Assembly: GCA_013416795.1 (NCBI GenBank) | Contig: RQSC01001094.1 | Coordinates: 64,630-94,526 of the forward strand | Source: Prasinococcaceae sp. CCMP 1430 | Lineage: Eukaryota > Plantae > Prasinodermophyta | Direction: 5' to 3' | DNA: 29,897 bases | Shown here: piece by piece, positions 1,083 through 29,897 of the stretch | How positions within the stretch are numbered: position 1 is the first letter of the stretch | How the letters are laid out: every line of letters begins with the position of its first letter | Notes under the pieces: generated by a model | What the model was told of the DNA's origin: nothing | Databases searched by the model: none | The model's input: the letters and a program-made list of their open reading frames with translations, nothing else | Made by a program: the position numbers and the translations under genes

Positions 1083-1083
1083 G

Positions 1084-9381: not shown

Positions 9382-9510
9382 GGTACAGTACTGTGAGGAC
9401 GTGCGCACATCACGTAAAATATTTAGGGTATCATACATACAGGGTTTATGTGTAATCACATGCACTGGGCGCCGGCGCTGCACCGACGGTGGCCCCCGTC
9501 ACGACACGGC

Positions 9511-10511: not shown

Positions 10512-10940
10512 TCATGCTACCTTCGAGGCGGCCTTGGCTTCTTCCAGTCGCATCCACTTGTAAAACTCCGCCCGTGACGCGTGCGCCTCCTTCAGCGACA
10601 CGTCGTACAGCGCGCGGCCCATCACGTTGCCGAACGAAAAGCCTGCAGCGCCGCCGAGAGCGCCGCACACTGCGCCAACGATGGGGTTGCCAGTCGAGAG
10701 CGTGCCCATGGTGAACATCGCTCCCGCGCCCGCATAGGTCGAGGTATTGGTGAACCCCTCGACCTTTCGCACGTCGGCGTGCTTGGCCCCAAGCGGCTGC
10801 GACTTCTCGAATGTGGCGACGTCGGCGTCAGTCCACTTGGCAGGCTTCTTCATGACAGACAGCCTGTACGCGTCGAACCACGGCGCGAAGCCTTCCTTCG
10901 ATATGCGCAGCGAGTGCATAATGCCCTCCATGACAGACAT
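10512..10940 (-). CDS. SDH6: SDH6-like protein (plant-type mitochondrial complex II accessory subunit), 142 aa
   Basis: P-x-W-(T/S)-x-x-D-V-x-x-F-x-x-S-x-P segment, two Gly-rich hydrophobic helices (GGAAGFSFG) and C-terminal EFYKW resemble land-plant SDH6 from memory. A-rich start context CTAAAC-ATG. Confidence 0.65.
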   Translation of the reverse strand: MSVMEGIMHSLRISKEGFAPWFDAYRLSVMKKPAKWTDADVATFEKSQPLGAKHADVRKVEGFTNTSTYAGAGAMFTMGTLSTGNPIVGAVCGALGGAAGFSFGNVMGRALYDVSLKEAHASRAEFYKWMRLEEAKAASKVA

Positions 10941-11389
10941 GTTTAGGCTACCCTCGCCGTCCGTGATGGGCGCCAGTCCCTCGCTCTCAGTGCGAGCGTA
11001 CCTGCACGTGCGTCCGCAGCAGGCGGTCAGTCGAGCGCGTGGCGCGCGGGAAGGGCGCGAGCAGTACCGCGGGGCGGCGCGGCGAAGCGTGCGGGTGGTG
11101 GCATGGCCGGGGTTGGGTGGGAATGGGGCAAGTCAGCGGAGCCGGGGCGCCGTTCATCGCAGGGAACACCGCGTCGCCGCCCGGCACGGCGAGGGCTCGC
11201 ACTCTTCGTGCACCATGCCCGCCGCGCCGCCTCGGCTGCCTCCGCCCCGCCGGCGCTGTAGGGTAAACCCAAAACATGCGCGCACTCGTGCCTCCTCGCG
11301 CCGCGCGGCGGCGGCGGCGCGCCGTTCCGTTCGCAAGCAGCGGGCGGGGGAGCAGCAGGTGTTGCCGCGTCCCCCACCCACCCACGTAC

Positions 11390-11688
11390 CCGTTCGACGG
11401 CCCGCCGACGGGCATGTGGCCGTTCGGCGCCTGCATGTACCCCTGCTGCTGGTGCTGCTGGGCCGCGACGCCCTGCTGCCCGCCGCCCGCGGCCGCCTGC
11501 GGGTTGCGCGCGACCATGCGCCGCGCGACCGCCTGCAGCCTGCCCTCGAGCGTGTTGGCGTCCTGGTACTCATCCTTGGAGCGCGCCGTGCGGTACAGCG
11601 CCTCCTCGAGCCGCCGCACGAAGTCGGGCAGCTTCACCTGCCACTCCTTGGACACGTTGGGCTTCCGCGAGGTGAACAGGCGGAAGAT
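11390..11688 (-). CDS. Internal exon encoding a plant-type KIX domain (as at the N-terminus of HAC1/CBP-type acetyltransferases and MED15) plus a Q/G-rich tail
   Basis: IFRLF...EWQVKLPDFVRRLEEALYRTARSKDEYQDANTLEGRLQAV. CAG acceptor at 11691-11689 and GTACGT donor at 11389. The upstream exon is probably in the gap. Confidence 0.75.
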
Positions 11689-11728
11689 CTGCCCGGCGGA
11701 CGCGCGCGCGCGGGGGGGAGAGTGGGAA

Positions 11729-11751
11729 GGGGGGGGGGGGGGGGGGGGGGG
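11729..11751 (+). repeat. Poly-G run (23 nt) abutting the gap
   Basis: Directly visible. Confidence 0.95.
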
Positions 11752-11840
11752 NNNNNNNNNNNNNNNNNNNNNNNNNNNNNNNNNNNNNNNNNNNNNNNNN
11801 NNNNNNNNNNNNNNNNNNNNNNNNNNNNNNNNNNNNNNNN
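11752..11840. other. Assembly gap (89 N)
   Basis: Run of N. Confidence 0.99.
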
Positions 11841-11919
11841 CCGCGGGCGGCCGCCGGCGGGACGTGCGCGCTTCCGCCGCGCGCACGCGCTGGAGTCAGC
11901 GAGCGCCGCGGTGGCGACG

Positions 11920-14900
11920 ATGACGGCGGAGGCGATGACCGCGGACATTGCAGCCGCGCCAGCGAAGCGCTACAAGGCGCGGAAGGGCAGGGAGGAGGTG
12001 GTGCGTGGCGCGCCACGAGCGTTGCGGGCCCAGCGCGAAATCTCGCAGCACGGTTTTGCTCGCCCCCCCCCATCCACCCACCCACCCACGCACCCACCCA
12101 TCGCCGGCCAACCCACAGCGGTGCCCGACGCCCCAATTCCGCGCCCTCGCTCGCTGCAATGTAGGCTTCCTGCCGCGCACGATTGCTTGGTCGCGCCGCT
12201 GATAACAGCCGGTGTGCTGACGCGCCCTGCTGCGCGCGTTCGTCCCACTGGCCCCACGCTCGCAGCCGCCACCCATTGCGGCGTTCATTGCCTCGGTTGT
12301 CGCTGCGGGCACCTCGCCGCCGGCGCTAGAGACGGCGCTGTTCGGCTTCAAATGGTGCTTCGACGACAAGGGAGACTTCTATCACTGGGTCGAGCTCTTC
12401 AACTTTTTCGATGAAGTGTTTATGGAGCACGTCGCCAAGCGCGCCGACTTGCGCTGCGAGGCCGACGCGTCGAACGACGCGGCTCCGCCGCCTACGCTGC
12501 CATCGGCGATGCTCACTGCCGTCTGCCGCGCGCTCTCTGCAATCCTCGACAATTGCGCGAACAGACACCTGTTCGTGTCCTCGGACTATCTGAGCCTGCT
12601 GCTTGGGGCCGATGACCGCGAGCTGGTGGCCGTGGTGCTAGAAACGCTCATGGTACTTTCCAGGCGGCCGATGGAGGGTACGCGGCAGATGAGTCGGTGG
12701 AGGCCAGGGCAGGATCTGTTCAAGCGGCTCGTCGCTATGACAAAGGGCTGGGGTGGCAAACAACAGGGCCTGGACATGCTCGCGTGCGTGGCCGAGGGAG
12801 GCCTTCCCGAACCGCTGCCGGAGGGGCCGCGCTCGCTGCGCTTCCAGTACTACGGCGCGGGGACCGCCGCGCATGGCTCGGCTGGCAACGAGGGCGCTCG
12901 TGGGGACGAAAAGCTACGGGTAGTGCAGGTGGCTCCCTACCGACTGCAGTCATCCACGTGGCGTGAGCTCGCGCGAGAGCATGGCGTCCCAGCAGACCTC
13001 ATGTTCTCGTTCGGTGCAGCCTACCACAACGCGCGGTCCTTCGCATCTCTATCGGCGCGGCGCCGGCGTGTGCAGGAGCGCCTGCAGGTCTACTCAGTCC
13101 TGCTTTACTGTTGGGTGGACGCGTCGGTGGTGCAGTTCCTACAGAACTCGGAGCCAGAGCTGGCGTCAGAGCTGACAGCAGTGGCATGCATGCACGGGAG
13201 CGGTCCGGATACCCAGAGGCTGCGCTCGCTCGGGCTCGGCGCGCTCGCTGCGTTTGCCAGCGACCGCTCACGTACTGGCGCGACCCTTGCAGCGCTGGGC
13301 GCCGGTGACACCAGCAGCGCCGGCCGCGGTGTGTTGCCCCACATCCTGCAGGCGCTCAAGTCTGGCGCTGAAGTCGCATCGCCTGGCCCGTCGCGCTCGG
13401 ATAGCGGCGAGAGTGACCCGAAACGCCCGCGGCTAGCGGAGCCAGACACGACGGAAGCGTACGCAGAGGCCGCGCTCGCGCTCGTGTACAGTCTCATGCT
13501 CACCTCCCATGGGCTTCACGCGCTCTCTGGCGCTGGTCTCGTCCCGGCACTGGTGCCCATGCTCTCCGACACCTCATCAGCACGGGAGGGGCTCGTGACG
13601 GCGGCAGTGCGCTCGCTCGAGTCCTTCATCGACTTCCTCCCGACCTCGGCGCAGCTCTTCCGTGAGCTCATGGGGCTGGATAAGGCCATCAAACGCATCG
13701 TGCTTGAGATCGAGAGTGCAGACCCTGGTGCCCTCGCTCATCCCCCTCAGCAGTGCGAAAATGTCCCCGCCGCGCCGACCGCCCAGGTTGATGGATCCCA
13801 AGCCCTGCGTGAGACTACGGAGGGTGCAGAGGCCGCGCCTGCTGCTGGGACGCTTGGATACAACAAGAAGCGGTTGCTGAAAGCCCTGCTCAGAACGGTC
13901 ACCGTCGCAAGCTACTCTCCAGGAGCGTCGACGCGGGCAGTCCTCGAAAACACGCGCCTACCTTCCTGCCTCACTGCGTTGCTGCTGCGGCCACGCCGCT
14001 TCGGCGGCGGCATTTTCTCGCTGGCTGCCAATATGATGTCAGACATTCTGCATCAAGAGCCGACATGCTTCGGAGTCCTCGACGCGTGGGGCACCCCGGC
14101 GGCGCTCCTTAAGATGGTCGTGCAGAGGGGCGGCCTGCCTGTGTCGGCCGAGACTTTGTGCTGCGTGCCCACGTCGATCGTTGCCATATGCCTGAATCAG
14201 GCCGGTCTCGAGGCCGTGAGGCGAAGCCGTGCTCTGGACTCTATCGTGCGTATGTTCACATCCCCATCGTACGTGAAGGCACTCGCTGGCGATACTGCGT
14301 CGGTGCTCGGGAGTGGACTTGACGAGCTCATGCGCCATGCACCTGATCTGCGGGCTGAGGGTGTGCGCGCGACGATCGATATCTTGAGGGCTCTGGCAAA
14401 GGCGCATGAGAAGGTTGTCGAGAAGCTGGCCGCGGAGGAGCGCTCTGAGACCCCTGTTCCCTGTCCTGCACCGGGCGCGCTGCCCATGGTGACGGATGCA
14501 GGTGCCGTCGCAAATCCTGTGGCTGCAACGGACGTGGTCGAAGAGGACTCGCTACGCTCCGGGGCCACGGGGGCGATATATGCCGAGGCCGAGGCTGGCG
14601 CGATGGCCCTGAGCGAGACGATGCTTTCAGATGCTGTGAGCAACGCAGTGCGCTTGCTCGAATCGACTCTTGGCTCCAAGGACACGAGCAAAGAGTTCGT
14701 TCAGCAGGGCGGCGTGCAGCTTCTGCTGCAGCTGTACGCGCTGCCAGCGATGACTTCGTCAAATACGCCTATCTCTGCGACGATGGCTATCACGTTTCGG
14801 TCGTTTGGCGCTGACAACGCGGGCCCAGTTGCGAAGGCCGTGTGCGACCGCACCTATTTCGCGCTCAAGCGTGCATCCGCTGAGTTGGAGCTGCTGCCTT

Positions 14901-17900
14901 GGGAAGGCATCGCGGAGGGCGGCAAGGATGGAAACACCAATCTTGGGGGCGCTCCCGACAAAGACACGACGGGGCTGGAAGCCGATGTCAGCGAGGGCGG
15001 TCTCCCTCCCGCGCTCGTCCGAGCGCTGCGCGAATCGGAGTGCCTCCTTTCGCTCGCGGCTGGGCATGTGCGTGGGTCGACGGCGTTCCAGAAAGAGCTG
15101 AGCAAGGAGCACGGCCTGGTTTTCATCGAGGCGCTTGGGCATGTCATGTGCACGACGCTGTGGCAATCTGCGGCGCGGACGCGGGCGTCAATTGCCCAGA
15201 AGGGGCCTGAACCGAACACTTCTGCACATGGTGCTCCCGGGGGGTCTTCTGGCGGCGCACAGTCTACAGAGGAGGATTCGGGTGCGCCTGAGGGTGCATC
15301 GGGGCAGAACGCAGCTGGCACTGGCGATGCTGGCTCGGCGCACCCAAGCGAGGGCCGGGCTGGCAACGCCGCTGACGCCGTGCGTGGCAAGAAGACAAGG
15401 CCCGGCACCATCGCAACTTTCACGTCGGCTGCGCGGGGGTTCCTCCAGGCGATTGTCAAGGCCGCCTCAAGCACCAGCCGCCGAGAGCAGTTCTCTCCGG
15501 CTGTGCTGCACCGGACTTGCGCAGGCGTGGCGAGAACGCTCACATCAACCCTGCTGTACAAGGGCCCTCTTGCTATTTCTGACCTTTCGCTTGGCAGTCC
15601 CTCAGCTGCGGAGCATGAGCTTGCTTCTCGCAAAGCGATTGTCGACGGCATCAGGCGTGAATATGTCGCTGCTGCAGCTGAAAACGCAGATGCGCTGCTG
15701 TTTGATGCGAGGCGGAGCACGGCGAACGCTTTCTTACACGGCTCGCTGCAGGAGAACGCAGTGCTTGAGGCACTCCGCTCAGTCACGCTATGGGCAACTG
15801 AGGAGCACGTCTCAGTGATGTCAAAGAAATCGGAGGAATCAGAGGTGCAAGATCCTGTTCTTGGGGCGGACATCGAGGCGAGCTCCAAGGCCGCGTGCTA
15901 CTGCCTCGCCCTCTTCGAGAGGCTGGCCCGCGCGCAGCTCGTGCTGACCGGCGCGACGGCAACGAATAACTTCATCGCGGCGAGGTACCGCAATGTGCCG
16001 GGAACTCCGCCGCCGGCGGCTGGTCAGATGACCATGTTTGAGATCCAAAGTGAGGCTATGGGGATCGCGACTGCTTTGTGGTCACGTGAAGACTTCTTTT
16101 CTGGCATTTTCGACGATGCTGTCGTCTCCGCCGTGCTCTCTCTGATGAGCGCTGCAACTGGTGGGCTCGAGGGGGTCGAGCAGCGTGGCAGGATGGCTGC
16201 CCTTGGCACGCTCAGGACGCCAGCGGCGGCGCCTGTTCCGCTCGGGGGTGGCCGCTACGACAACTTGCATCTCGCTGCCGGATCAATTCCGTCTTTGCTA
16301 AACCAGGCTCGCGCTGCTTCCCAACGGCGTACTGCATTTGTCCCGTCTGCTGCTGCAGTTGCCTCCATTTGCGAAATGGGGTTCTCTGAGGCTCGCGCTC
16401 GCCACGCTCTGCGACAGGTTGGTAGCGACTCGCTCGATCTCGCACTTGAGTGGATCTTCAGCCACCCGAATGTCGAGCCGCCGCCAGAGCCTGAGGTCCC
16501 ATCGGGTGCAGATCCCGCGGGTGCTGCGAGCGACGCAGCTGCTGCCGGTGCCTCGGGTGCTGATACCGATGCAGGGGCGAGCGGCGAAGCAAGCGGGGTC
16601 GGGGCCCCCAATGGCGGTGCGGATGGTGCTGTGCCAGCCCCCAGCCAGGTCGGAATCGCTCCAACTACTGCGACGCAGACGGGGCGGATCACGGCGGAGG
16701 ATCTACAGCGTGCTGTCATGGCTGGGCAGGCAGCTGGCGCGGCTTCGGCTGCAGGCGGTGCGTCTGGCGGGCAAGACGATGGAGGTCATCCCGGTCCGAA
16801 CGTGAAGGAAGCCCCCAAGCTCCCAAGCGTCGACTACGTTGTCGCGAAATGCTGCAATCTTTTGAAACGCACGGGAGGCGTGCTCCCAGCAGCGATGAAG
16901 CTGCTGTCACGCTCCATCACCGGCGCCCCTGAGTACGACATGTCGCCGGGACGCGCGAAGGAAGTGCAGGCAGCAGCGCGGGCGCGGGCAGATGTGGTCG
17001 TCGGAGGCCTCGTCGGGGCCATCAGCCGCGAGGTACTTAGCTACAAGGAGGATCAGCGCCTCCTCCACTGCGTGCTGCTTCTGGTCGATGGAAAACAAAA
17101 CAGCTCGTCGGCGCGTGCTGCTGCCGCCTCGACGCCCAGGGCAATCGAGATCGCGCTCAAGGTCCTCGCAGACATAGACGAGGACGCTGGAGAAGCGCAG
17201 CAGCAGCTACTTGCTACCGCAGCACTGCTGCTCGCGGCGTTTAGCCGTATCACCACGACGAAACCCAGCGCAAGCAGCGGCATTGGCGCGAGTGGTGGCG
17301 CTGGCGCAGGCGACGCGAAGGTGAGCGGCTTGGTTCCCGCCGCGACATCAGGCGAGGGAGGTGACAACACTTCGCCGGACGACGAGCGCGAGAAGGCCAT
17401 GAAAGTGCTGGTTGAAGCCGCTGCCACTACCTCTCCGCAGGGGGTGCCCGCCCTAGGCGAGGGTGCGCGAGGGCAGGCGCTAGCAGCGTGCTTGCAGAGG
17501 CTCACAGCCGAGCGCCCACCCTCCTCGTCGGTCCTGCAAGCGCTGTGCTCGTTGCTGGGGCCCATCACGCGGGACAACGCCGTAGCCGTTTCTTTGTTCC
17601 GCGGAGGCGGTGTGCGGGCGCTGCTCAGAATGCCAGCAGCGAGCACCTTCCCTGGGTATGACGCGTGGCTACGAGTGATCCTGAGGCACTGTCTGGAGGA
17701 CCCCGTGTCCCTCCGGCAGGCGATGGAGGCAGAGATCAGGTCTTACGTTGGCATGGCGGTGCAGCGGCAGCAGGGAGTACCGCTGCGCGCCGTGCTGTCG
17801 TCGTGCACCGCGCTCATCGAGCGCGACCCTTCAGCCTTCGCGTCCGCGCTCGCTGCTGTTTGCGATCTCAAGACCGAGCCGAGCGGCCGCTGCACAGTGG

Positions 17901-20900
17901 TCCTGCACGTGCGAGATCGCGAGTCCAGGGACAAGACGCCTCACGACACGCCGGCGAAGCCGGCGAAGCGTGAGGACGTCCAGCAGTCGAAGCCGCGCGA
18001 GAGTATTGGTAAGCTCGCCTTGACACCCGTCAAGCCCCCTGCAAAGCTCAAGAGCGGCAGGGAGGGGGACAAGAAAGCGAAGGCCAAGGCCACGCCCGGT
18101 GGAAAGGACAAGGCAACGCCCGCTGGGAAGGATCGCGACAGGTCAAACCGCAAGACTCCTCCTGGAACATTCCTGAAGGTTGTACTCGAGCTGGTCGAGC
18201 TCCTTTACCGCTACCAGGATGCAGCGCGCGCGCTGGAGAGCGGCTCGGCCTCCGCCATGGACGTCGACCGAGGCGAGGAGGAGGCTGGCGCTGCGGACGA
18301 GTCTCTCAAGGAGCTCAAAGAGGCAGAGAAGCATGCGGCGCACCGCGCTCTCTTCGCCCTTGGTGCCATTGCCGACTTCAGTATGCTCTTCCCCTCGACA
18401 TTCGCCCCGGCGGTCTCGAGGATCGAGCGTGATCCTCAGCATGGCATCCCCTTCAAGAAGGAGAGCGAAAAGGAGCGTGAGCGCACCAAGGGCAAGGGCA
18501 AGGAAAAGGCGTTGGACGCCAATGCAACGGAGTCGACATCGCTGCTGAGTCTGCTGTTCAACGTGCTACTCCCGAGCGCGCTGGGCGAGCGTCGCGGGGA
18601 CGCGGCGATTCGCCAAGCCATTGCAAATCGCGCTGGGACGGCGCTCGTCGCTGTGTCGCTCATGAGCGCTGAGGGCAGACGGCGAGTGCTTCGCTCTATC
18701 AGTGATAAACTCAGTAGCCCGCTGGAGGCGCCGGCCGATGAGCGCATGAAGCTTGCTGTGACCTGCCGGCCCACGCTGGATCTCATTACAGCGATGGTCA
18801 CGACTGGCAGCAATGGTGGCGTGGTCAGCGCTGACAACATCAAAGCGATCACTGACGCTCGCGTCGCCGAGGCTCTTGGCACCGTCCTGCAGGCGGTCGA
18901 CTTGCACCATCCGCAGGCGCCAGCACTCGTATCGGCGATTTTGAAACCCCTCGATGCGCTCGCGCGCGCTGCCTTGGCGGCGGCCAACAAGGCGGATCCC
19001 TGCGGCAGGGCAGCTGGAGCGCGCAGAGATGCCGGGCGCGCCCTCGAGTCCACTGCGGCTGACCTCGAGCGAATCCGTGCCAACATCAACGCGCTGGGCT
19101 CAACCGTCGCTGAGCTCACTGGAGGGAGGCCAGGCAGCGCTGCCCGTGCGGGAGCCGAGGGTGGTGTAGGCGACCCGTTGGCGGTCGGGCGCGACCCCGC
19201 CGCGGACACGGCGGACGATGGGGAAGGACGTGCTGCGGGGTCAACTGCGCCTCGGGGGCGTGGCGGCGAAGGTCGTGCGGGCGGGAACGGTGATGCGGAA
19301 CCACTTGACGAGCTGGCCGTCGCAATGAACGAGGGCACCGCACTGACAGACCTTGCGGCGGCCATGCAAGAGACGGCGCAGGCGACCTATTCCGACGGGT
19401 ATGGACCTTCCGGGCTCGGCGGGGCAGGTGGCGACTTTGACAGCGACGATTCATCTGGCGTGGACCTGGAAGATGACAGCGACGACGACGAGGAGGACAG
19501 CGACGATGAAGATGAGGACGACGACGACGATGAGGAGGACATGGACGAAGATGATGATATGGAGATTGAGGTCGAGCTTGCTGGCGAGGCTGAAGATGCT
19601 GACTCCGAGGATGAGATCGTTGAGGACGATGACGATGACCTGGATGACGACGATGACGACGACGAGTCAGACTCGGAGGATGAGATCGACCTCGATGACG
19701 ACGAGGAACTCGATCTAGCGAGCGACAGCGATGTCGAGGTGCCCGAAGTCGCTCTCGAAGGCCCCGGTCAGGCGGAGGCCGATGAGGGCATCGAGGAGGA
19801 CTACGACGATGATGACGGCATGGGTGAGGAGATAGACTTTCCCGACGAGGACTTGGAGCAGCAGATGGGCGGGGGCATGACGGGCGGGTGGCACATTCTG
19901 GGGGATGACGATGGCAGCGGCAACCCTCCGACCGGTGTGCAGGGCGACTTGCCGCTGATGGATGGTGTGCATGGTCTGCCGCCGGGTGCCACCATGTCCA
20001 TCCGTGACGCCCCCGATGGGCAGTCGCATCGTGTCATCGAACTCAGGCTGCCTCAAGGCTTCGCAGGCCTGCTCGACGGTGCCGAACGTGAGGGCCTCTC
20101 TTTTGGCCAGAGCTTCTTCGAGACGGTGACAGCACAGGCACGTGCCGCATTGGACTCCTTTGACACCATCGCGGGTCAGTCTCGTGAGAATACTGGCGGG
20201 GGAAGCGCGCGCGACCGGGACGTCCTTAGCGCGCCGCATCCCCTCCTGCAGGATCAGCCTGCAGAGGGTGCAGGAGGAGCAAGGCCTGCTGATGCGGCGA
20301 CCGGTTCGGTGCCATTTGGGGGGCTGCGCCAAGCCCGGCACGGAGGTCTGGCAGCACCTCGCTTTCACAGGGCGCGGCCACTGGATGATGAAACAGGCCA
20401 AGCCATTCGGCGGCGGGCGGGAGCCCAGGGAGTGAGGTTGTTCGATTTCAGCGACGATCAGGTCTCCGCGACTGGGCCGGCCGAAAGCCTCCTGAACGCC
20501 GGCGGGGCGCCTGGTCAGTACGTGGTCGTGCAGGAGGGCATGGCACCGAGTAGCGCGCGGGTCGTCATGGTGGGTGGTCCTCAAGGCCCTGCAGGATCAG
20601 GGGGCCGCAACGATGGGCGACTGGCTCACGTCGGGCGAGACACTGCAACAATTCCACCACCGCTGATGATCGAGAGCGCTCACGCCATTTCGCGAGCTGC
20701 TGCTGAGTCCAGGGCCACGCGATGGAGAGGGCAGCTGCCGGCTGCTCGCGCGGATCAAACGTCTGCCGGACCGCCATTGCACGGAATGCCGACCGGGGGT
20801 ATGCCCGAGGACGTGGTCATGCGCTTCATGCGAGCATCGGGCTCAGTTGTGGAGGATACCGCACCCGCGCCTGGCGTCGCCGCTGCCGCCGCTGCTGCAA

Positions 20901-23900
20901 TTGCTGAGGCAGCACCGGTCCCAGAGCTTTGGCCAGCGTCAGGGACTGCCCACGGGGTTGTTGCTGCTGGTGATGATGGGATCGCGCCGATGCGGGCTGA
21001 GGCGGACAACCCCCCTGCAGAACGAGCACAGACGACCACGGATCCAAGGACGACAAGTGACGCTGACGGCGGCCCTGATGGCACCCAGGAGGCCAGCCTG
21101 CGGCCTGCGGAGCCTTCAGCGCAGCCACAACCGCCATCTGAGTCACAGCAGGAACCTCTGGCTGAGGCCGAGGAGGAAATGGTCGATGGAGACGGCGCTG
21201 ATGAAGAGAATGAGGATGCGGCCGGTGGCCCCGCTGACGGCGCGCGGGCTTCGGCGGAAGCTGGTGGTGATATGCCAGCTCAAGATGCCCAGGTGCGCGT
21301 CCCGGGTCTTGCCGAGGCGGCTCGATGTGATGCTGATGGGGCTGCCGAGGAGACACGCGCGGACGAAGTGTCCGGTGATGGCGTGCCTGCCGAAGAGCCG
21401 GCTGGGGAGCCGGTCGGGGATTCGGCCGGGGTCCCAGCCGGGGCGCCAGCCGGCGAAGCGACTGCAGAGCCGGCTGGTGCACCAGATGGAGCAGAGGGCA
21501 GCGAGATGCCTGGTGGTGTCGATCCCTCCTTCTTAGAAGCCCTGCCCCCCGAGCTGCGCGCCGAGGTGATGGCGACACAAGTGCCACAGATTGAGCGCGA
21601 GCACCAACGTCGGCGTGCAGCAAGCAACGATGCCGGGCGCGGCTCACAGCCGGCCGCGCGAGATGCGCCGGAAGGAGGTACGAGTGGCGCGGGTACCGAC
21701 CTGGACCCTGAGTTCTTGTCCGCCCTCCCCCCCGAGCTCCAGGCCGAGGTGATGGCTCAGAGCAGGGCGGCCGCTCGTGCGCCGCCTTCGCGTCCTGCGC
21801 AGCCGGACAACGCCAGCATCGTGGCATCCTTCCCGCGCGAGCTGCGAGAGGAAGTGTTCCTTACTGCCGATGATTCCTTCATCGCGAGTCTGCCGCCAAG
21901 CTTGCGGGCGGAGGCGGAGGCTGCGCGCAGGCGCGCGGCGGAGGCTGCTGCCCGCAGAAACCAAGCAGCGCCGCCGGCAACGCACGAAGGCCTAGGGCGA
22001 GGCCGTTGGAGAGCTCCAATGCCCGGGGGAGTCCGAGGGACGTCTTCTCTTGTGCCTGGCCCTCCTGGTCTCGCCACCGGTTCGGATCCGAGGCGTGGCA
22101 ATAGCACTGCGGGCGAGGGTGTGCTTACGGAGACAATGCCGGTCCTTCTAGGTGAAAATGCCTTGGCAAGTGTGCTGTCTTTGCTGCGCATGGCAACGCC
22201 CCTACCCGGTGGCAAGACCCAGCTACAGCGCTTGCTCCTGTACCTGTCCTCGAATGCAGAGGTCGCCAAGCAGATCGTGTGGAAGCTTGCGCTCATGTTC
22301 AGGCCTGAGCTCACAGCCCCTGTTGGGGCCTCCGAGGCTGAGAGGGCGGTCATTGAGGCTGCATCGGCCGCCTTCGACGCGGTGCGCCTGCCGAGCGATC
22401 CTGTCAGCAAGAAAGCGGCTGCAACCGGCATGTTCGGGAGCAACTCGATGATCGCCGCCGCCGTTGACGAGAGCGGTAGCCCAACCAGCGTGCCACCAGT
22501 GGTGACCCGGCGGGCGCTGGAGACTGCCGCGTATCTCTGCAAGGGATCGGATACGGTCGGAGAGCTGTGCATCGCACCGCTGCCAGCTTCGGAGGAGGTC
22601 GCTCGCGTCAGCAAGGGCAAAGGCAAGGCGGATGAGGCAGGTGCTTCCGAGCAGAAGTCGCCATCGGCGCTCGGATTGATGCTGAAAGTGCTGGGCGTCC
22701 CTGTGTACACGCGTTCGTCCGCCCAGCTCGAAAGCGCGCTCGCTTTCCTGGAGCAAGTGCTCAAGGTCGCGGACCGCGACGCCATGCGACGCAGCGAGTC
22801 GCGTTTCGCGAAGGTCCAGGCGGCCGCCGAGCGCGTTTCGCTAGAGGCCCACCGCGCAGCCCTGCGCGCGGCTCTCGCCCGCGATGCTGGTCCTGCCGGT
22901 CAGTCGACCGAGGCGGTTGAAGCGGCTGCGCGCAGCGCGCAAGATGGGACCCCCGGCGCGAGCGGCGGGGGATCAGGGACGCAGGCGTCTGCTGCCGATG
23001 AGCTGAAGGGTTTGACTGGCCCCGCCGACGAAATCCTGCCTGGCGTGGGTGAGACCGACCTGCGCCGCGTGCCCGCACTTCTAGCTGTCCCTGGCCTGAC
23101 AGACCTGGCGTACGCCAAGGTCGCGGATGTTATGAAGCTCCTCACGGCGTGCCACGCGCCGTCGCTCGAGCTCTTCATCACCGAGCTGGGGGCAGCCGCT
23201 TCGGACATGCACGAGGACGTCGCTGCCGAGCTCCAGCGTGTGGCATCTCGGGCCGAAGCCGCTGGCGACGCATCCGGCACGGGTGCAGTCGGCGGTGCGG
23301 GTGCGGGCCTACTGCGTGTGTTGCAGGCGATGCGCATGCTGACAACTCGGGCGGACGCAGTGGAAGCCTCGCGCGCGCGCCTGCAGAAGGCGCTGGCCAA
23401 GGCCCGCGCGGCTCGCGGCGTGTCTGAGCCCCCTGGAGACGATGATCTTGCTGGACTGGCTCCGGGCGGTGCACAAAAGCGCCGCAAGCTCGTGCAGGAC
23501 GTTGCTCGCTCGCTCGAGCCCGCTCTCGCGAAGCTGTCGGTTGCCGCCTCCGCCGTTGAGGCTGCAATGGGTGTGCGCAAGGACAAGACGCCGGGACGCC
23601 CTAAAGCTGCCGGCGCGCCGCCCAGCCCTGCAACGCTGCCGCCGGCTGCGAATGATCTGCTGCCATTCATCCAGAGTTTCTTCGCTTTGTGCGAGGCCGC
23701 AGGCCTGCTGCCGCCAAAGCCGGACGCCGACACTGAGCGCGAGCGCAAACCCCACGGCGCTTTCGCTTCTGGGGCAACGCGCGGGGCGGCAGGCCGAAAC
23801 GAGGAGATCGAGCCCTCGAGCGTGATGATGATTCGCACCACGTCGCTCGGCGCCGCACAGATGGCCGTGAGGGCGGCCATGGCCGAGCGCGACGGCACAC

Positions 23901-25276
23901 CTCTGACGCCTGCGGGAGCCGGCTCGAGCCGTGGCAAGGAGCGCGACGAGGGGAGGCTCGTATTTTCCTTCGATTCGAACGACGAAGGCGGCGCCTTTGT
24001 GAAGTTTTGCGAGACGCACCGCACGCTCATCAACGCGTACGTGCGCCAGGCGAAGGCCCTCGAGGGCCCCCTCGAGCCTCTCGCGCGGGTGCCGAGGCTG
24101 CTCGACTTCGACAACAAGCGCGCATTTTTCAGGCACAGGGTCCGCCAGCACGCCGCCGGCGAGCGAGGCGGCACGCTGCGCGTGAACGTGCGCCGCGCCT
24201 TCGTTCTCGAGGACTCATTCCACCAGCTGCGGATGCGCACCCCCGCGGAAATGCGCGGCAAGCTGCAGGTGCAGTTCGCCGGTGAGGAGGGCATCGATGC
24301 CGGTGGCCTCACACGCGAGTGGTTCGGCTGCCTGTGCAAGGAGATTTTTAAGGCGAACTACGCGCTCTTCAGCTCGTCCTCGGCGGCGGGGACGACCTTC
24401 CAGCCCAACCCTCTGAGCTATGTGAACAGTGAGCACCTGAGCTACTTCAAATTTGTCGGGCGCATCGTCGGCAAGGCCATCTACGACGGCCACCTGATGG
24501 ACGCCCACTTCACGCGCTCGTTCTACAAGCACATGCTGGGAATGCCCATGACATTTCACGACGTTGAGGCCGTGGACCCCGCCTTTTACAAGACGCTCGT
24601 GTGGATGCTCGACAATGACATCACGGACGTCCTCGACCTGACCTTCACGGCCGAGGCCGACGAGTTCGCCAAGCACCTCTTCGGTGAGGACAATTCGCTT
24701 GCCAAGACTGTCGAGCTCAAGCCCGGCGGCGCGGAGATCGCGGTGACGGAGGAGAACAAGCACGAGTACGTGGCATTAATATCGGAGTACAAGATGATTG
24801 GCGCGATCCGCACGCAGATGCGCGAATTCCTCTCAGGCTTTCACGACATCGTGCCCCGCCACCTGATCAGCATCTTCGACGACAACGAGCTCGAGCTACT
24901 GCTTAGTGGATTGCCCGAGGTTGACCTGGACGACATGCGCGCCCACACGGACTACCACGGCTACTCGGCCGGCAGCAAGCAGATCACGTGGTTCTGGGAC
25001 GTCGTGCGCTCGCTCGAGAGCGAGGACCTGGCCCGCCTGCTGCTGTTCATCACGGGTACATCCAAGGTGCCGCTGGAGGGCTTCGCCGCCCTGGCAGGCA
25101 TCCAGGGGCCGCAGCGCTTCAACATCCACCGGGTGCAGGGGGAGACTGACAGGCTTCCCGCAGCCCACACGTGCTTCAACCAGCTGGACCTCCCGGAGTA
25201 CGAGAGCCGCCAGCAGCTCAAGGAGAAGCTGCTCACCGCCATCCAGGAGTGCGCCGGCGGCTTCGGCTTCGGCTGA
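11920..25276 (+). CDS. UPL1: UPL1/2-HUWE1-Tom1-type HECT E3 ubiquitin ligase, join(11920..12000,12266..25276), ~4,363 aa
   Basis: The spliced N-terminus KRYKARKGREEV|PPPIAAFIASV...FKWCFDDKGDFYHWVELFNFFD matches the UPL1 N-terminus. It is followed by armadillo-like DUF908/913-type regions, UBA, an acidic tract, UBM repeats and a C-terminal HECT domain ending RLPAAHTCFNQLDLPEY...GFGFG. Confidence 0.96.
12001..12265 (+). other. Spliceosomal intron (265 nt, phase 0) in the HECT ligase gene
   Basis: GTGCGT donor, CTGAC branch-like motif near 12216, C-rich body and CTCGCAG acceptor. Splicing restores the conserved N-terminus in frame. Confidence 0.88.
16358..16468 (+). other. UBA domain of the HECT ligase
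   Basis: VASICEMGFSEARARHALRQVGSDSLDLALEWIFSHP (MGF loop). Confidence 0.85.
19433..19859 (+). repeat. Asp/Glu-rich low-complexity tract (GAC/GAT/GAG repeats) in the HECT ligase
   Basis: DDDEEDSDDEDEDDDDDEED...; a central acidic region is typical of the HUWE1/Tom1/UPL1 family. Confidence 0.9.
21518..21920 (+). repeat. Ubiquitin-binding motif (UBM/DUF4414-type) repeats
   Basis: VDPSFLEALPPELRAEV, LDPEFLSALPPELQAEV, ASFPRELREEV and FIASLPPSLRAEA. Confidence 0.85.
24176..25276 (+). other. HECT catalytic domain, catalytic Cys codon at 25172-25174
   Basis: FAGEEGIDAGGLTREWF, FKFVGRIVGKAIYDG, FITGTSKVPLEGF and AHTCFNQLDLP. Confidence 0.95.
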
Positions 25277-25331
25277 TGTCGCCGGCGGCCTGCGTTGGTT
25301 GCTTAATGATGATACATTTACTGCTTAACAG

Positions 25332-25336
25332 TTACA
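25332..25336 (-). terminator. Candidate TGTAA poly(A) signal for the methyltransferase gene
   Basis: TTACA on + lies 58 nt beyond the minus-strand stop, in an AT-rich patch. TGTAA is the established chlorophyte signal. Confidence 0.4.
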
Positions 25337-25393
25337 CGTACACACGCGCGCACGCACACACGAACACGCAAGCGCGCGCGGCCTGTGGCCTCG

Positions 25394-26002
25394 TCACCAC
25401 ACGCCGGGCAGAATTTTGTGCGGCGTTGCCTCACAAAACCTGGCCCACTGCTCCCCATGCCTCTCCTCAAGCCACGCCTCCTCGAGCGCCGACTTCTCGT
25501 CGAAGACCTTGGCCAGCGCCGCCGTGAGTAGCACTCGCGAAAGGCTGCCAGTTATGACGGTGACGCCGGCGCATCCACACAGGACGCCGAAGTACATCGG
25601 GTGTCGCACAAGCGCATACGCGCCGCTGGTCTTGAGCTCGCACGCCTCCTCCCGCGGTTCGGGGAGGTGCCACAGCGAGTCGCTCAGCGAGAGAACTCCC
25701 CACGCCGCGGCACCCATCCCCCCCAGGAGCGCGGCCTTTCCTGCAAGCACGGCCGCGTGCGCGTCCAGCCCGTATACCGACCACTCCACCGGCGGAAACG
25801 CCACCCCCAGCGACAGCGCGATCTGCGCCGCAAAGAGCGCCACGCCGGCCGCGCGGCGGCGCTCCTCGTCGCCAGCATGCACGACACAGACTCTGTGTAC
25901 AAGGTTTGAAGATTGGTTTGGTAGGAAGTATATGGTTTCTGGAAAGAAACCCCATACCAAGAATTCAAACGAGAGGAAGAAAGACTTCCTGAGGGTGACC
26001 AT
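25394..26002 (-). CDS. Isoprenylcysteine carboxyl/phospholipid methyltransferase family membrane protein (5' end uncertain)
   Basis: LKTSGAYALVRHPMYFG and EEAWLEERHGEQWARF motifs with hydrophobic helices. First in-frame ATG at 26002. Confidence 0.82.
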   Translation of the reverse strand: MVTLRKSFFLSFEFLVWGFFPETIYFLPNQSSNLVHRVCVVHAGDEERRRAAGVALFAAQIALSLGVAFPPVEWSVYGLDAHAAVLAGKAALLGGMGAAAWGVLSLSDSLWHLPEPREEACELKTSGAYALVRHPMYFGVLCGCAGVTVITGSLSRVLLTAALAKVFDEKSALEEAWLEERHGEQWARFCEATPHKILPGVW

Positions 26003-26046
26003 CGACGACGAAGCAAGCCGGCGCGGCACGCGTACAGTGTCCGCGC

Positions 26047-27258
26047 GTGGGCGTGCAGGCACCGGCGCGCCGCATTGCCGTCGCCGCCAGTGGGGGCGGT
26101 GGGGGCGGAGGGGAAGTGACCGGAGGTGACGTGCCCTCGGCGGCCGACGCTGCGAATGCGGTGGAAGCCGCGTCGCCCAGTCTGCTACGCCGCGCGGTGG
26201 GTCTTTGGCCGCTCGCTGCACTGTGGGCTGCGAACCGCCACGAGCCACCGTCGGAGGATGCTCCTCTCGTGCTCGATGACGCGCAGTGGCGGCAGCTGGT
26301 GCGTGTGCGCGAGAGCTTGTGGCATGTATAGGCGCACGCAACGGCGGCACGACCGCTGAGAATGCTGGCGCCTGGCGATGCCCGCCAACGGGCCACGTGT
26401 GTCGTGGCCGCGCGTGGCCACACCTGACGCTCGTGCCCCCCCCATCCCCACGACACACACACCACCACCACCACCACCACCACACACTCGCCCCACCTCT
26501 CCCATCCACCCACCCTCTCACGCACATACACTGTGCGCGCGCACGCAGCTAGATGACGCGCAGTGGCGGCAGCTGGTGCGTGTGCGCGAGAGCTTGTGGC
26601 ATGTATGGGCGCACGCGACGGCGGCACGACCGCTGAGAATGCTGGCGCCTGGCGATGCCCGCCAACGGCCCACGTGTGTCGTGGCCGCACGTGGCCACAC
26701 CTGACGCTCGTGCTCCCCCCATCCCCACGACACACACACACATACACCACCACCACCACCACGGTGTGAGCGGGGTGGAGAGGGTAGGTGGGTGGGAGAG
26801 TGCGTGTATGTGACACGCCGCGCACGCAGCTGACGCCAGCCGAGTACGACGTGCTCAGGAACTGGGGCACGGAGTTCTCCGGCAGCTCCCCGCTGGACAA
26901 GCTCTACAAACCAGGCACTTACGTGTGCAAGGCGTGCAACACCCCCCTGTGGCGGTCGGAGGACAAGTTCGACTCTGGCACGGGCTGGCCGAGCTTCTCC
27001 GACCACCTCCCCGGCGCGATCGACAAGACGGTTCAGTTGCTCTACCTCATCGGCGACTTCGGCTGCCGCGAGGTGCGATGTCATCACTGTGCGTCGCATC
27101 AGGGGCACGTGTTCAGCGACGGTCCGCCGCCCACAGGCAAGCGCTACTGCATCAACGGCGTCGCCATCGACTTCGTCCCGGAGGGCGAGCCACTGCCAAA
27201 AGTGCGCGCCGCGGACGACATCGACGTGCGCGCTGCAGCTGTCACTGCACGCGAGTGA
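26047..27258 (+). CDS. msrB: Peptide methionine-R-sulfoxide reductase B; exons ...26298, (26549-26575), 26830-27258; start unresolved
   Basis: Spliced LDDAQWRQL|[15 protein letters not shown], two Zn-binding CxxC pairs (CKAC, CHHC), [17 protein letters not shown] and catalytic RYCING. GTGCGT donors and GCACGCAG acceptors. Confidence 0.92.
26272..26829 (+). repeat. Tandem duplication of 27 nt of exon plus a whole intron (277 + 281 nt)
   Basis: Copies 26272-26548 and 26549-26829 align with 6 substitutions in the first ~170 nt, (CA)/(CCA) microsatellite length changes and one complemented block. Confidence 0.95.
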
Positions 27259-27789
27259 GTGGTGAGAGCGCTGAGAGTCACTTGTCCAGAAAGGAGAGTC
27301 CACTACGGTGGTTTGTGTCACCAGCGGCGAGCGTCCAGGGCGCCACGCGGGGCTGACGAGCGCGCTCGCCACATAGAATCAGGCGTGGGAGGGCGCAGTG
27401 CGCGAGTCTGCATGTGCGCGTGTTTGCGTTTGTGCTTGTTGGTGTGTATGTGTGCGCGCGGCGCGTGTCGCCAGCTGGTACGTCATCGCGCTGCAGCCGC
27501 AGCCTCCTCTGCGGCGGTCCTCTTCGCGATCGTCCTCGCGCCCCGCTCGCGGGCTCTGGGTATCAACAGTCGCGCACGGACGTCGGCGAGTCGGAATTCC
27601 GTGGACCGGTCGCGGGAGTCCTCGCCGTTGCAGAAGCCGACGAACTTTCGCCACGTGCCACCCTCGTGGCACGCCTGCTCGGGCGCAGCAAGCTGTCAGC
27701 CCGCATGATGCGGCGCAGCGCAGGGCAGGGCGGGGCGGCGCGGCGCAGCAAACAACATCGCGGCGCGACACGGCGTCGACGCCTGCTGC

Positions 27790-29040
27790 CCACCTTAAGA
27801 GCACGGATCGCCTCGACGCACGCCGGGTGCGCGACCTCATCGAGGTGGGGATGCATCGCCCAGCGCGGCGCGGCGCCGCCTGCGCCGGCCCAGACGCGCC
27901 GCTGACCCCGATGGTGCGCACCCCCTGTGGCGCGTGTACCGCGGCGTCGCAGCCGCTGGGCCACGCGCGCTCCGCCTACGCCCTCCCCCAAACAATCCTC
28001 CCGCGCGCACAAAGACAAACTGCCCAGCGGCAGCGCCTCCGCACTCGTCTTCGGGCGCATGCGGTGTGGCAGGCGCATACGCGCAGGATCTGCAGATGTG
28101 CGCGCGCTTGCCGGGATGCCACTTGGCACGCGGCGGGCGGGGCGCCGCGTTGACGGGGCAGGGGGCGCGAGGCGCCCGCGGGTGGCGATGGGGCTCAACG
28201 CCGGGGCCGAAGACGCGGCGCCAGCGCAGCGGCGCGCGCCTGTGCGCGCCGCTGGAGCTGCGACAGATGTGCCTGCGGCTGGCATCGATGCAGCGGACGC
28301 GGCGGCTGCCCTCACCGCGCGCCAGCTCGGTTCCATGGCGATGCCTGGGCCTGACCCATCGATGATCAGGAGCGTCGGCGTCGCCAGCGAGTTGCTCCTC
28401 GCCGTGGCGGAGCGCCCGCGTTGGTACATGAGCTTGAAACTCCTCCGGAAGTTCCTCACGCACGCGTGGCCCGCGCACAGCACCGATTGAGCGGCTGTCG
28501 CGCGTGCTGCACGCGCTTGAGTGTCGTGGCCTGACCCCCACTGTGGCCCGTGCCCCACCGCCACCGCGCACTTGCGCACCTCCGCACAGGTATACCTCAG
28601 TAGTTGGTGTCTCGGCCGAGAGGGAGTTTGCGCTCGCCGCAGCACAGTTCGCTGCAGGACAGAGCGCTTGCTCGGCCGAGGCGCGCGCAAGGCTCCGGCG
28701 CGACGCTTGAGTGGAGCTGTCTGGCCTGGAACGGCTGCAGCAACTCGCATGGCAGAAGGACGAGCAGCTGAAAGCGAGGCACACCGCGATGCTACAGATT
28801 GCACGCAGATCCGAGGCCCTGCGCTCTGCCGGGTGCTGCGAGGAGAGGGAATGCAACTGCGCTCTAGGTACTGGCCACATGCTCGAGGCGCAGGAAGACC
28901 TCGTCGCCATGGTGGGGGCGGACGAGGACGTTCGACGCGAGGCGTACCGGGCGCTGGAGGACGTGGTCAGCCGAATACAGGAGTACGTCGACACCTTCCG
29001 AGAAGAGCTCACTGACGCAACGGAGAGCGGCGAGCTGTGA
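27790..29040 (+). CDS. Probable multi-exon gene of unknown function, structure unresolved, with an in-frame TGA at 28708-28710 (possibly a pseudogene or sequence error)
   Basis: Coding-like segments HLKSTDRLDARRVRDLIEVG, ELLLAVAERPRWYMSLKLLRKFLTHA|YTSVVGVSAERE (putative intron 28466-28589) and ELSGLERLQQ...FREELTDATESGEL. An AT-rich patch follows the final stop. Confidence 0.45.
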
Positions 29041-29261
29041 TTGTATTATTATCATTCGACCCCGTCGAGCCAGGCGCGTGTCGCTTCGCGCCCGCGCGGC
29101 GCCTTCGTGAGCTGGGGCAGGAGGCACGAGACCGGCAGCGGAACGCGCTGTTAGCGCCCCCTGCGCCTCCGCACCCTGCTACTTCCACGGCTCTTGCTCC
29201 CTCCACCTGCACCCCGGCGGTCACGGAGCTGCGGCAGTTTGTTTGGTGGCCGTCCTCTGCG

Positions 29262-29897
29262 TCAGGGCTTGCTGAAATTGGCCGCGCCCGGTGCGCCCGC
29301 GGCGGGGCCGCTGCCCGCGGACGGGAAGAGCGGCGCTGACGATGCTGGCGGTGCGGACGCTCCTCCAAAGAGCGTACCACCCAGTGGGCTCTTCCCTGCG
29401 TCGCCCTTCGACGCGTCCGCGCCGAAGTCTGTGCCACCAAACGTCGCTGTCTTCTTGGCGGCTGATGCCGTCGGGGCCTCGACGCCGAATAGCCCAGCAC
29501 CAGCAGGCGTCGCTCCCGCCGGGGTTTGCTCACCGCCCAACGCCACTGCCGCAGCCGGTGCGACAGCAACCACGGCTGGCAGAGGCTCAGGGGCGTCTTC
29601 GAAGCCCTCGAACGGATCGTAGTCGTCCAGTCCACCACCTGCTCCAATACCCTGCGTTGCGCCCTTGCCGCCGCCACCTCCAGCGGCGGCTGCAGCGAGA
29701 CCGCCGCCGTCGCGACTGCCACCACCTCTTCTGCCAAGCACGCTGCTGAAGCTCTGCGCGAGGTTGCGCATCTTCCTCCGCACCGCATGGGCCTTACGTC
29801 TGCCCTCCGTCCCGGCCCGGTCGCCTGCCACTACCGGCCGCCCACGCACCCGCTGCGCCTGCGCCTGCGCGGCTGCGGCCGCGGCCGCGGCGACGCG
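29262..29897 (-). CDS. 3' end of a gene entering from the right edge; low-complexity Gly/Ala tail
   Basis: The frame is open to the window edge: ...MRNLAQSFSSVLG...DDYDPFEGFEDAPE...ANFSKP*. No family recognised. Confidence 0.6.
   Translation of the reverse strand, partial: RVAAAAAAAAQAQAQRVRGRPVVAGDRAGTEGRRKAHAVRRKMRNLAQSFSSVLGRRGGGSRDGGGLAAAAAGGGGGKGATQGIGAGGGLDDYDPFEGFEDAPEPLPAVVAVAPAAAVALGGEQTPAGATPAGAGLFGVEAPTASAAKKTATFGGTDFGADASKGDAGKSPLGGTLFGGASAPPASSAPLFPSAGSGPAAGAPGAANFSKP

What the first reader, a model, noticed from the sequence alone, without database searches (positions are those of the whole stretch)
26764..26818. 55-nt block that is the exact complement, without reversal, of the matching block in the neighbouring repeat copy
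Seen: 26483-26537 (CACACTCGCCCCACCTCTCCC...CATACACTGTGCG) and 26764-26818 (GTGTGAGCGGGGTGGAGAGGG...GTATGTGACACGC) pair C:G and A:T position by position in the same 5'->3' direction, 55/55. Ordinary identity resumes immediately afterwards (CGCGCACGCAG). This is not an inversion, which would give the reverse complement. The C-rich version looks native, since the HECT intron has the same CCATCCACCCACCC style. The G-rich version puts several AGs between the branch motif and the acceptor and adds G-tracts that could form a quadruplex. Established: antiparallel templated synthesis cannot generate this. Inference: most likely a data artefact, either two boundary errors in colour-space (SOLiD) decoding, where a sequence and its complement share the same colours, or an in-silico edit or gap-filling bug. 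If it is real DNA, it implies parallel-strand or mirror copying, which would be a new mechanism.
Basis: partly seen in the sequence, partly recalled or inferred. Interest (0 to 1): 0.88.

Follow-up and report, generated by a model that had tools for sequence, protein, structure and literature searches.

The report
Assembly artefact: complement-only 55-mers
The 55-base stretch that reads as the complement, but not the reverse complement, of its neighbour is really in the file, but it is one of five exactly 55-base software errors in a badly assembled stretch of a green-alga genome and not a feature of the DNA.

Summary
Window 26764-26818 is the 55/55 position-by-position complement of 26483-37 (chance about 5e-31).

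It is not biology. Sixteen independent sequences of this locus were compared: Logan read assemblies, Tara Oceans metagenome contigs and a JGI transcript. Every one that covers the site has a single copy of the repeat, and all seven whose intron is alike enough to compare carry the C-rich version directly in front of MsrB exon 2.

The window holds four more complement-only blocks, each exactly 55 nt: 27560-614, 28417-471, 28691-745 and 29215-269. None occurs in any independent sequence. One of them garbles 18 codons of the conserved Cmc1 gene.

The "neighbouring repeat copy" is a second natural allele of the same intron placed in series. It is framed by exactly 55 shared bases on each side, which is the signature of a k=55 de Bruijn bubble. 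The 14 kb upstream has no such block.

The best reading is an assembler or scaffolder bug that wrote the junction k-mers of one contig without proper reverse-complementing. Colour-space (SOLiD) errors do not fit, because the length is fixed and no other base-swap type is seen.

The organism is Prasinoderma coloniale or a very close relative. First-stage notes of this scan report the same kind of block on other pieces of this genome; those notes are unchecked.

Interest is low, beyond a warning about this assembly.

The parts
26764..26818 (.). Complement-only block 1 (the finding). It is the last 55 nt of the wrongly inserted second allele.
   Evidence: 55/55 complement; independent loci carry its complement, with 0 mismatches in L001, L002, L006 and L007. 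L016 is identical to copy 2 (block complemented) except at the last base.
26483..26537 (+). Native C-rich homologue in copy 1, the polypyrimidine part of the MsrB intron.
   Evidence: The same sequence lies in front of exon 2 in independent contigs.
26275..26551 (+). Copy 1: the last 24 nt of MsrB exon 1 plus the intron, in allele A. The inferred contig P ends at 26551.
   Evidence: 2-4 differences to L006 and L001; its ORF equals the first 57 residues of EukProt PRCOL_00003904-RA.
26552..26832 (+). Copy 2: the same unit in allele B. It is extra sequence, absent from every independent assembly.
   Evidence: one copy in all 13 genomic loci that reach the start of the unit. (1 difference to Logan contig L016 once the block is complemented).
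26552..26606 (+). The 55 nt shared with copy 1 up to the first allelic difference. Inferred to be the start k-mer of the bubble branch.
   Evidence: the direct match 26275/26552 is exactly 55 nt; the first variable column is column 55.
27560..27614 (.). Complement-only block 2, inside the Cmc1 coding exon on the minus strand.
   Evidence: native form in 16/16 loci; 18 codons are garbled and the Pfam Cmc1 match is lost.
28417..28471 (.). Complement-only block 3.
   Evidence: native form in all 13 loci that reach it.
28691..28745 (.). Complement-only block 4.
   Evidence: native form in all 12 loci that reach it.
29215..29269 (.). Complement-only block 5.
   Evidence: native form in all 12 loci that reach it.
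26830..27258 (+). MsrB (SelR) exon 2 with its stop codon.
   Evidence: Pfam SelR, 127 bits; transcript L005 splices ...CAGCTG|CTAACG, that is 26298 to 26830.
26017..26298 (+). Part of the upstream MsrB coding exon, ending ...DDAQWRQL with a GT donor at 26299.
27483..27676 (-). Last coding exon of Cmc1, holding block 2.
25874..26016 (.). A 143-nt low-GC filler that matches no independent contig. It is probably another mis-join at the edge of the bad stretch.

Best explanation
The block is an in-silico error of this particular assembly, not DNA. SHOWN: the locus really has one copy of the exon-end plus intron unit, with the C-rich tract in front of MsrB exon 2. The window carries a second natural allele of that unit inserted in series. 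Five stretches of exactly 55 nt between 26764 and 29269 are written as their complement. INFERRED: the reads contained two haplotypes, and a de Bruijn-type assembly with k=55 produced a bubble. One contig (P) ran through allele A and stopped at 26551. A second contig (Q) began at 26552 with the bubble's start k-mer, ran through allele B and continued downstream. The two contigs were abutted without a gap, which gives the false tandem duplication. In contig Q the k-mer overlaps between successive graph segments were emitted with faulty strand handling. For example, a stored reverse-strand k-mer that is reversed but not complemented reads as a complement-only block exactly k long on the plus strand. 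This accounts for three things: the fixed length, the position of block 1 directly after the last allelic difference, and the confinement of the blocks to the part of the window after 26552.
For: Observation. Five blocks of exactly 55 nt, with no other base-swap type and no reverse-only block. Of 16 independent loci (6 Logan runs, 9 ENA metagenome assemblies of which 8 are Tara Oceans, 1 JGI transcript), none has any block in the window's form. All that cover blocks 2-5 have the complemented form with 0-1 mismatch. Block 1 matches in seven loci, five of them exactly. One repeat unit in all 13 genomic loci that reach its start. With its block complemented, copy 2 differs from natural allele L016 at 1 of 281 positions. 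Copy 1 differs from L006 at 2 and from copy 2 at 15. The inserted piece 26552-26818 consists of 55 shared nt, 157 nt of variant interior (successive differences lie at most 52 columns apart, so one bubble at k=55) and 55 complemented nt. The published P. coloniale protein PRCOL_00003904-RA equals the copy-1 ORF joined directly to exon 2, and no canonical intron in the window could produce that. Block 2 replaces 18 in-frame Cmc1 codons and removes the Pfam match (31.3 bits, against none). Tara contig L017 aligns to 11880-25873 at 99.1% with no block. A size-estimated N gap directly after a run of 23 or more G points to a short-read scaffold.
Against: I could not see the raw reads, the graph or the scaffold file of this assembly, so the software and the k value are inferred. 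Blocks 2-5 do not abut polymorphisms that are known among the sampled haplotypes (nearest 4-63 nt away). A simple canonical-k-mer rule does not predict which 55-mers are affected. First-stage notes on other pieces of this genome report other block lengths of about 23-143 nt and 900 nt (unchecked). A single k does not explain these without overlapping junctions or several assemblies. The only published genome of this species is described as a gap-free PacBio/NextDenovo/NextPolish assembly. This scaffold, with its N runs, does not obviously match that description.
Confidence: 0.85

Rival explanations
1. A post-assembly in-silico edit unrelated to the assembly graph. Candidates are a file-handling script, a polishing or gap-closing patch, or deliberately planted test blocks. 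Such an edit complemented stretches of fixed length. The tandem duplication would be a separate error, or real.
For: The fixed length of exactly 55 nt fits any deterministic program. Other windows of the genome are said to carry blocks of other fixed sizes, about 126 nt and 900 nt (unchecked). The same stretch has other oddities, including a 143-nt filler at 25874-26016 and a missing start exon.
Against: Block 1 starts one base after the last allelic difference, and the inserted allele starts exactly 55 nt before the first one. By a rough estimate of about 1 in 50 for each, a blind edit would hit both only about once in a few thousand trials. The inserted copy is a natural allele found in an independent read set (L016), so it comes from real reads. 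Block starts are not spaced in multiples of 55, so this is not a line-based file error.
Confidence: 0.1
2. SOLiD colour-space decoding. Two colour miscalls bracket each block, and a sequence and its complement share the same colours.
For: In colour space each block differs from the native sequence only at its two boundary colours, as it must by construction.
Against: Five of five blocks have the identical length of 55 nt. All ten boundary errors are the one type (XOR 3) out of three, which has a chance of about 1.7e-5. No XOR-1 or XOR-2 block was found against about 18 kb of independent sequence. The published genome of the species used PacBio Sequel plus Illumina.
Confidence: 0.02
3. The tandem duplication of the exon end plus intron is real in the sequenced isolate, and only the 55-nt complement stretch within it is an error.
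For: I examined no reads from the very isolate. The two copies differ at 15 of 286 alignment columns (5 substitutions; the rest is microsatellite length), as an old duplication could. A 27-nt in-frame mini-exon would be tolerated (direct reading of 26549-26575).
Against: All 13 independent genomic loci that reach the start of the unit have one copy, including L016, which is 99.5% identical to this haplotype. Each copy equals a different free-standing natural allele. The published protein model joins copy 1 straight to exon 2. The unit is framed by exactly 55 shared nt.
Confidence: 0.05
4. Real DNA. The G-rich block exists in the cell and was made by an unknown parallel-strand or mirror copying process.
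For: Nothing beyond its presence in this one file.
Against: The block is absent from every independent sequence of the locus. Four sister blocks of identical length lie nearby, and one destroys a conserved coding motif while keeping the frame. To my knowledge, no polymerase is known that copies a template in parallel orientation.
Confidence: 0.003

Closest known systems
False (haplotypic) duplications in genome assemblies, where two alleles of a heterozygous or mixed sample are placed in series. This is a known class of assembly error (my own knowledge, not looked up here).
   Same: The two copies correspond to two free-standing natural alleles. Every independent assembly has one copy. The duplication boundary sits at a graph-like junction.
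   Different: Here the closing junction k-mer is also written as its complement. I did not find that described in the literature I searched.
SOLiD colour-space symmetry, where a sequence and its complement share the same colour string.
   Same: The blocks differ from the native sequence only at two boundary colours.
   Different: The length is fixed at 55 nt, only one of the three possible swap types occurs, and there is no sign of the platform.
Small inversions and inverted repeats (reverse complement), and mirror repeats or H-DNA motifs.
   Same: A strand-symmetry relation between two nearby segments.
   Different: The block matches the reverse complement at only 23/55 positions and is not mirror-symmetric (23/55), so an inversion cannot produce it.
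k-mer overlaps at contig ends of de Bruijn graph assemblers. For example, 55 is the largest default k of SPAdes for short reads (from memory, not verified here).
   Same: The length is exactly 55. Block 1 coincides with the end k-mer of a bubble branch. The blocks are spaced at contig-segment-like distances of 274-857 nt.
   Different: Correct software collapses the overlap in the right orientation. Here the overlap has the right length but the wrong letters. The program responsible was not identified.

Membership tests
Colour-space (SOLiD) decoding artefact | Block ends fall wherever miscalls happen, so lengths vary | tested here: not met
   All five blocks are exactly 55 nt.
Colour-space (SOLiD) decoding artefact | All three base-swap classes occur (A<->C/G<->T, A<->G/C<->T, A<->T/C<->G) | tested here: not met
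   Only complement blocks were found. There are no XOR-1 or XOR-2 runs of 16-18 nt or more in register against L001, L003, L005 and L017.
Colour-space (SOLiD) decoding artefact | The assembly was made from SOLiD reads | not testable with these tools
   The window's assembly record is not available. The published P. coloniale genome used PacBio Sequel and Illumina (PMC7455551).
False haplotypic tandem duplication (de Bruijn bubble placed in series) | Independent assemblies or reads show a single copy | tested here: met
   One donor unit in all 13 independent genomic loci that reach it.
False haplotypic tandem duplication (de Bruijn bubble placed in series) | Each copy equals a different allele that exists on its own | tested here: met
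   Copy 2 differs from L016 at 1 position. Copy 1 differs from L006 at 2 positions and from L001 at 4.
False haplotypic tandem duplication (de Bruijn bubble placed in series) | The inserted branch is framed by k shared bases before the first and after the last difference | tested here: met
   55 nt shared at 26552-26606 and 55 nt at 26764-26818 (complemented). Interior differences lie at most 52 columns apart.
False haplotypic tandem duplication (de Bruijn bubble placed in series) | Both alleles are present in the reads of the sequenced sample | not testable with these tools
Genuine inversion or inverted repeat | The segment equals the reverse complement of its homologue | tested here: not met
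   23/55 to the reverse complement, against 55/55 to the plain complement.
Real genomic feature of the organism | Reproducible in independent sequence data of the same locus | tested here: not met
   0 of 16 loci carry any of the five blocks in the window's form.

The most novel reading that the evidence does not exclude
The five 55-nt complement-only stretches are real DNA in the sequenced isolate, written by some parallel-strand or mirror copying process that acts on fixed-length tracts. Only reads from that very isolate could exclude this formally, and I could not examine them.
Probability: 0.003. Interest if true: 0.95.

Novelty: not a real feature. Interest (0 to 1): 0.06.

Why it matters
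This matters as a quality warning rather than as biology. This assembly of a phylogenetically important green alga (Prasinoderma, Prasinodermophyta) contains stretches where fixed-length pieces are written as their complement, alleles are strung in tandem and exons are missing. In this window the errors break the intron of MsrB, garble 18 codons of Cmc1 and create a false exon-plus-intron duplication. Gene models, paralogue counts, repeat analyses and variant calls made on such stretches will be wrong. Scans of this genome will also keep throwing up "impossible" complement-only repeats. First-stage notes already list dozens of these on other pieces. A simple genome-wide filter against independent data would remove them all at once.

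Tried and rejected
1. A true inversion of a mirror-symmetric sequence was rejected. The block is not mirror-symmetric (23/55).

2. SOLiD colour errors were rejected, because the length is fixed and only one swap class occurs.

3. A FASTA-line or fixed-grid file error was rejected. Block starts are spaced 796, 857, 274 and 524 nt apart, none a multiple of 55.

4. A canonical-k-mer rule, in which only 55-mers larger than their reverse complement are affected, is not supported. It holds for 4 of 5 blocks in one direction, and the same 55-mer is written correctly at 26483.

5. The expectation that every block abuts a known polymorphism holds for block 1 only. For blocks 2-5 the nearest sampled variants are 4-63 nt away.

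6. A codon-usage scan of the HECT ORF for hidden blocks gave only weak candidates. The Tara contig L017 then showed there are none.

7. Three searches found nothing. These were search for related loci with the HECT protein in JGI metagenomes, the search for homologous proteins with its first 800 residues, and paper searches for the phrase and for the run accessions.

8. The supplement of PMC11884799, which lists SRA runs, is not held. I therefore could not tell whether SRR29950795/96 are CCMP1413 mutation-accumulation lines.

9. I could not establish which public assembly the window comes from. I could not cover 1-11751 with independent sequence either, so blocks there would have gone unseen.

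Full report
**1. The observation**

- Window 26483-26537 and 26764-26818 pair A:T and C:G at 55 of 55 positions in the same direction. Normal identity (13 nt) resumes directly after the block.
- The second block has 0/55 identity to the first, 23/55 to its reverse complement and 12/55 to its reverse. The first block is not mirror-symmetric (23/55). An ordinary inversion therefore cannot explain the relation.
- With the window's composition the chance of 55 complementary positions in a given register is about 5e-31.
- This is the only complement-only self-match of 20 nt or more in the window. Local shuffles reach 14-17 nt at most.

**2. Context**

- The window is 67.6% G+C over its called bases (66% with the 593 N counted), with two N runs at 579-1082 and 11752-11840. 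The second N run follows a run of 23 or more G.
- 12416-25276 is one 4286-codon ORF for a UPL1/HUWE1-like HECT ligase.
- 26830-27258 is the second exon of a methionine-R-sulfoxide reductase, MsrB (Pfam SelR). It contains no Met.
- The upstream exon ends ...DDAQWRQL at 26298, with a GT donor. A transcript from JGI sample 3300016765 (L005) joins ...CAGCTG to CTAACG, so the intron is real.
- In independent genomic contigs the intron is 250 nt long.
- In the window, the last 24 nt of the exon plus the intron occur twice in tandem, at 26275-26551 and 26552-32. The reported block lies near the end of the second copy.
- A Cmc1 gene lies on the minus strand downstream.
- The organism is Prasinoderma coloniale or a very close relative. 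Two proteins of the EukProt P. coloniale set fall in the same 90% clusters as the window's MsrB. An earlier follow-up note of this scan named the same species.

**3. Independent sequence of the same locus**

- A protein search with exon 2 found near-identical proteins from Logan, JGI and ENA. Their contigs were fetched.
- This gave 16 loci: six Logan read-set assemblies, nine ENA metagenome assemblies (eight from Tara Oceans) and one transcript.
- The loci represent several haplotypes that differ from the window and from each other by about 0.5-2%.
- All 13 genomic loci that reach the start of the repeat unit carry it once.
- Five loci carry the C-rich 55-mer exactly, directly in front of exon 2: L001, L002, L006 and L007 and L016. 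L003 and L004 carry it with 4 mismatches. The remaining intron-covering loci have more diverged introns, and their translations still read ...[18 protein letters not shown]|LTPAEY.
- None carries the G-rich version on either strand.

**4. More blocks, all the same size**

- Outside the duplication, the alignment to the independent contigs breaks down in four short equal-length patches.
- Each patch is a complement-only block of exactly 55 nt: 27560-27614, 28417-28471, 28691-28745 and 29215-29269.
- All loci that reach these positions (16, 13, 12 and 12 respectively) carry the complemented, native form with 0-1 mismatch. None carries the window's form.
- After the five blocks are complemented back, the window differs from its closest relative, L016, at 6 of 1334 positions.
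- Block 2 lies in the last coding exon of Cmc1. It replaces 18 in-frame codons (...EDS ALARCLKAERLQARADNYA RARE... in the transcript) with unrelated residues.
- The native piece matches Pfam Cmc1 at 31.3 bits. The window's piece matches nothing.
- No A<->C/G<->T block, no A<->G/C<->T block and no reverse-only block was found.

**5. The blocks are clustered**

- A 14-kb Tara contig (L017) encodes a HECT protein of the same length, 4286 aa. It aligns to 11880-25873 in one piece at 99.1% identity with one gap and no complement-only stretch.
- All five blocks lie after 26552.

**6. The "repeat copy" is a second allele**

- With its block complemented, copy 2 differs at 1 of 281 positions from Logan contig L016. 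L016 carries it as a single copy.
- Copy 1 differs at 2 positions from L006 and at 4 from L001. Copies 1 and 2 differ from each other at 15 of 286 alignment columns.
- The extra piece begins with exactly 55 nt shared with copy 1, up to the first difference.
- It then runs through 157 nt in which successive differences lie at most 52 columns apart.
- It ends with exactly 55 nt after the last difference, and those 55 nt are the complemented block.
- This is the shape of one branch of a bubble in a de Bruijn graph with k=55, printed in full after the other branch.
- The published protein PRCOL_00003904-RA equals the copy-1 ORF (57 residues, including a copy-1-private Arg) joined directly to exon 2.
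- No GT-AG or GC-AG intron in the window could give that product. The only 281-nt skip that ends in AG begins with CT. So a sequence from the genome project itself lacks copy 2.

**7. The most likely mechanism (inferred)**

- The read set held two haplotypes.
- One contig (P) followed allele A and stopped at 26551. This is one base into the next variant site, where all natural alleles have A and the window has G at 26832.
- A second contig (Q) started at 26552 with the bubble's start k-mer and followed allele B and the downstream sequence.
- The two contigs were abutted without Ns.
- In contig Q, the k-mer overlaps between consecutive graph segments were written with faulty strand handling. 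Reversing a stored reverse-strand k-mer without complementing it gives a complement-only block of length k on the plus strand.
- The model explains the fixed length, the position of block 1, the irregular spacing of 274-857 nt and the absence of blocks upstream.
- It does not explain why blocks 2-5 are not next to polymorphisms seen among the sampled haplotypes. The variants or errors in the original read set are unknown.
- A simple canonical-k-mer rule failed.
- The program was not identified. From memory, 55 is a common final k for short-read assemblers.
- The only published genome of the species is described as PacBio Sequel, NextDenovo, Arrow and NextPolish in 22 gap-free chromosomes. This scaffold, with its N runs, does not obviously fit that description, so the provenance of the window stays open.

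**8. Rival explanations**

- A blind post-assembly edit or planted block would also give a fixed length. It would rarely land exactly on both bubble boundaries, and it would not supply a natural second allele.
- SOLiD errors are rejected. Five identical lengths and ten boundary errors of the same one class out of three have a chance of about 1.7e-5 for the class alone.
- A real duplication with an artefactual block inside is unlikely, given the single copy in L016 and the published model.
- Real complement-only DNA is left with no support.

**9. Wider picture**

- First-stage notes of this scan list many complement-only blocks on other pieces of the same genome. Several are given as exactly 55 nt, and others as about 23-143 nt or 900 nt.
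- The notes also mention foreign fragments at gene 5' ends and missing terminal exons. These notes are unchecked.
- In this window I see a matching oddity. 25874-26016 is a 143-nt low-GC stretch that matches neither the tail of L017 nor the head of L008. All independent contigs align only from 26017 onward, and the MsrB start-codon exon is missing.

**10. Verdict**

The feature is an assembly or software artefact and has no biological novelty.
- It is useful only as a flag on this assembly.

Noticed in passing
window 25874-26016: A 143-nt low-GC stretch (about 45% by eye, in a roughly 68% G+C region) matches neither the tail of Tara contig L017 (aligned up to 25873) nor the head of L008. Every independent contig aligns only from 26017 onward. 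The MsrB start-codon exon is missing: the published model starts MAAPARR..., while the window reads ...VQAPARR. It looks like a mis-join or foreign filler without any N gap.
   Followed up: partly
window 27483-27676 (-) and 27793-27993 (-): A Cmc1 (COX assembly, twin Cx9C) gene lies on the minus strand with a 116-nt intron, and transcript L005 supports it. Complement block 2 garbles 18 of its codons, and the Pfam match disappears.
   Followed up: yes
window 12416-25276 (+): A UPL1/HUWE1-like HECT E3 ligase is encoded as one uninterrupted 4286-codon ORF. A Tara Oceans contig (L017) has an ORF of identical length at 99.1% DNA identity. The nearest named relatives are plant UPL1 proteins at about 60% identity in the HECT region.
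   Followed up: partly
window 11729-11840 and 579-1082: The N run of 89 follows a run of 23 or more G. The N run of 504 has ordinary flanks. These size-estimated gaps suggest a short-read scaffold rather than the gap-free long-read assembly described in the genome paper.
   Followed up: partly
loci L001-L016, MsrB intron (window 26430-26490 equivalent): Natural populations show at least six haplotypes of this locus, with different (CA)n/(CCA)n lengths in the intron and 1-2% SNP divergence. They come from Tara Oceans metagenomes of several stations and from several SRA runs. Prasinoderma-like algae therefore appear widespread and diverse.
   Followed up: partly
EukProt P. coloniale proteins P0123 and P0124: The published proteome holds two MsrB models for near-identical loci. 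PRCOL_00003785 is correctly spliced and has a Thr variant. PRCOL_00003904 starts at an ATG inside the intron and reads through it. The second is a mis-annotation. The pair suggests that the locus is present twice in that assembly, as a haplotig or a duplication.
   Followed up: partly
window 26551 versus 26832: The first base after ...GCAGCT is A in copy 1 and in all independent loci (codon CTA) but G after copy 2 (CTG, synonymous). It is a window-private base exactly at the inferred contig end.
   Followed up: no
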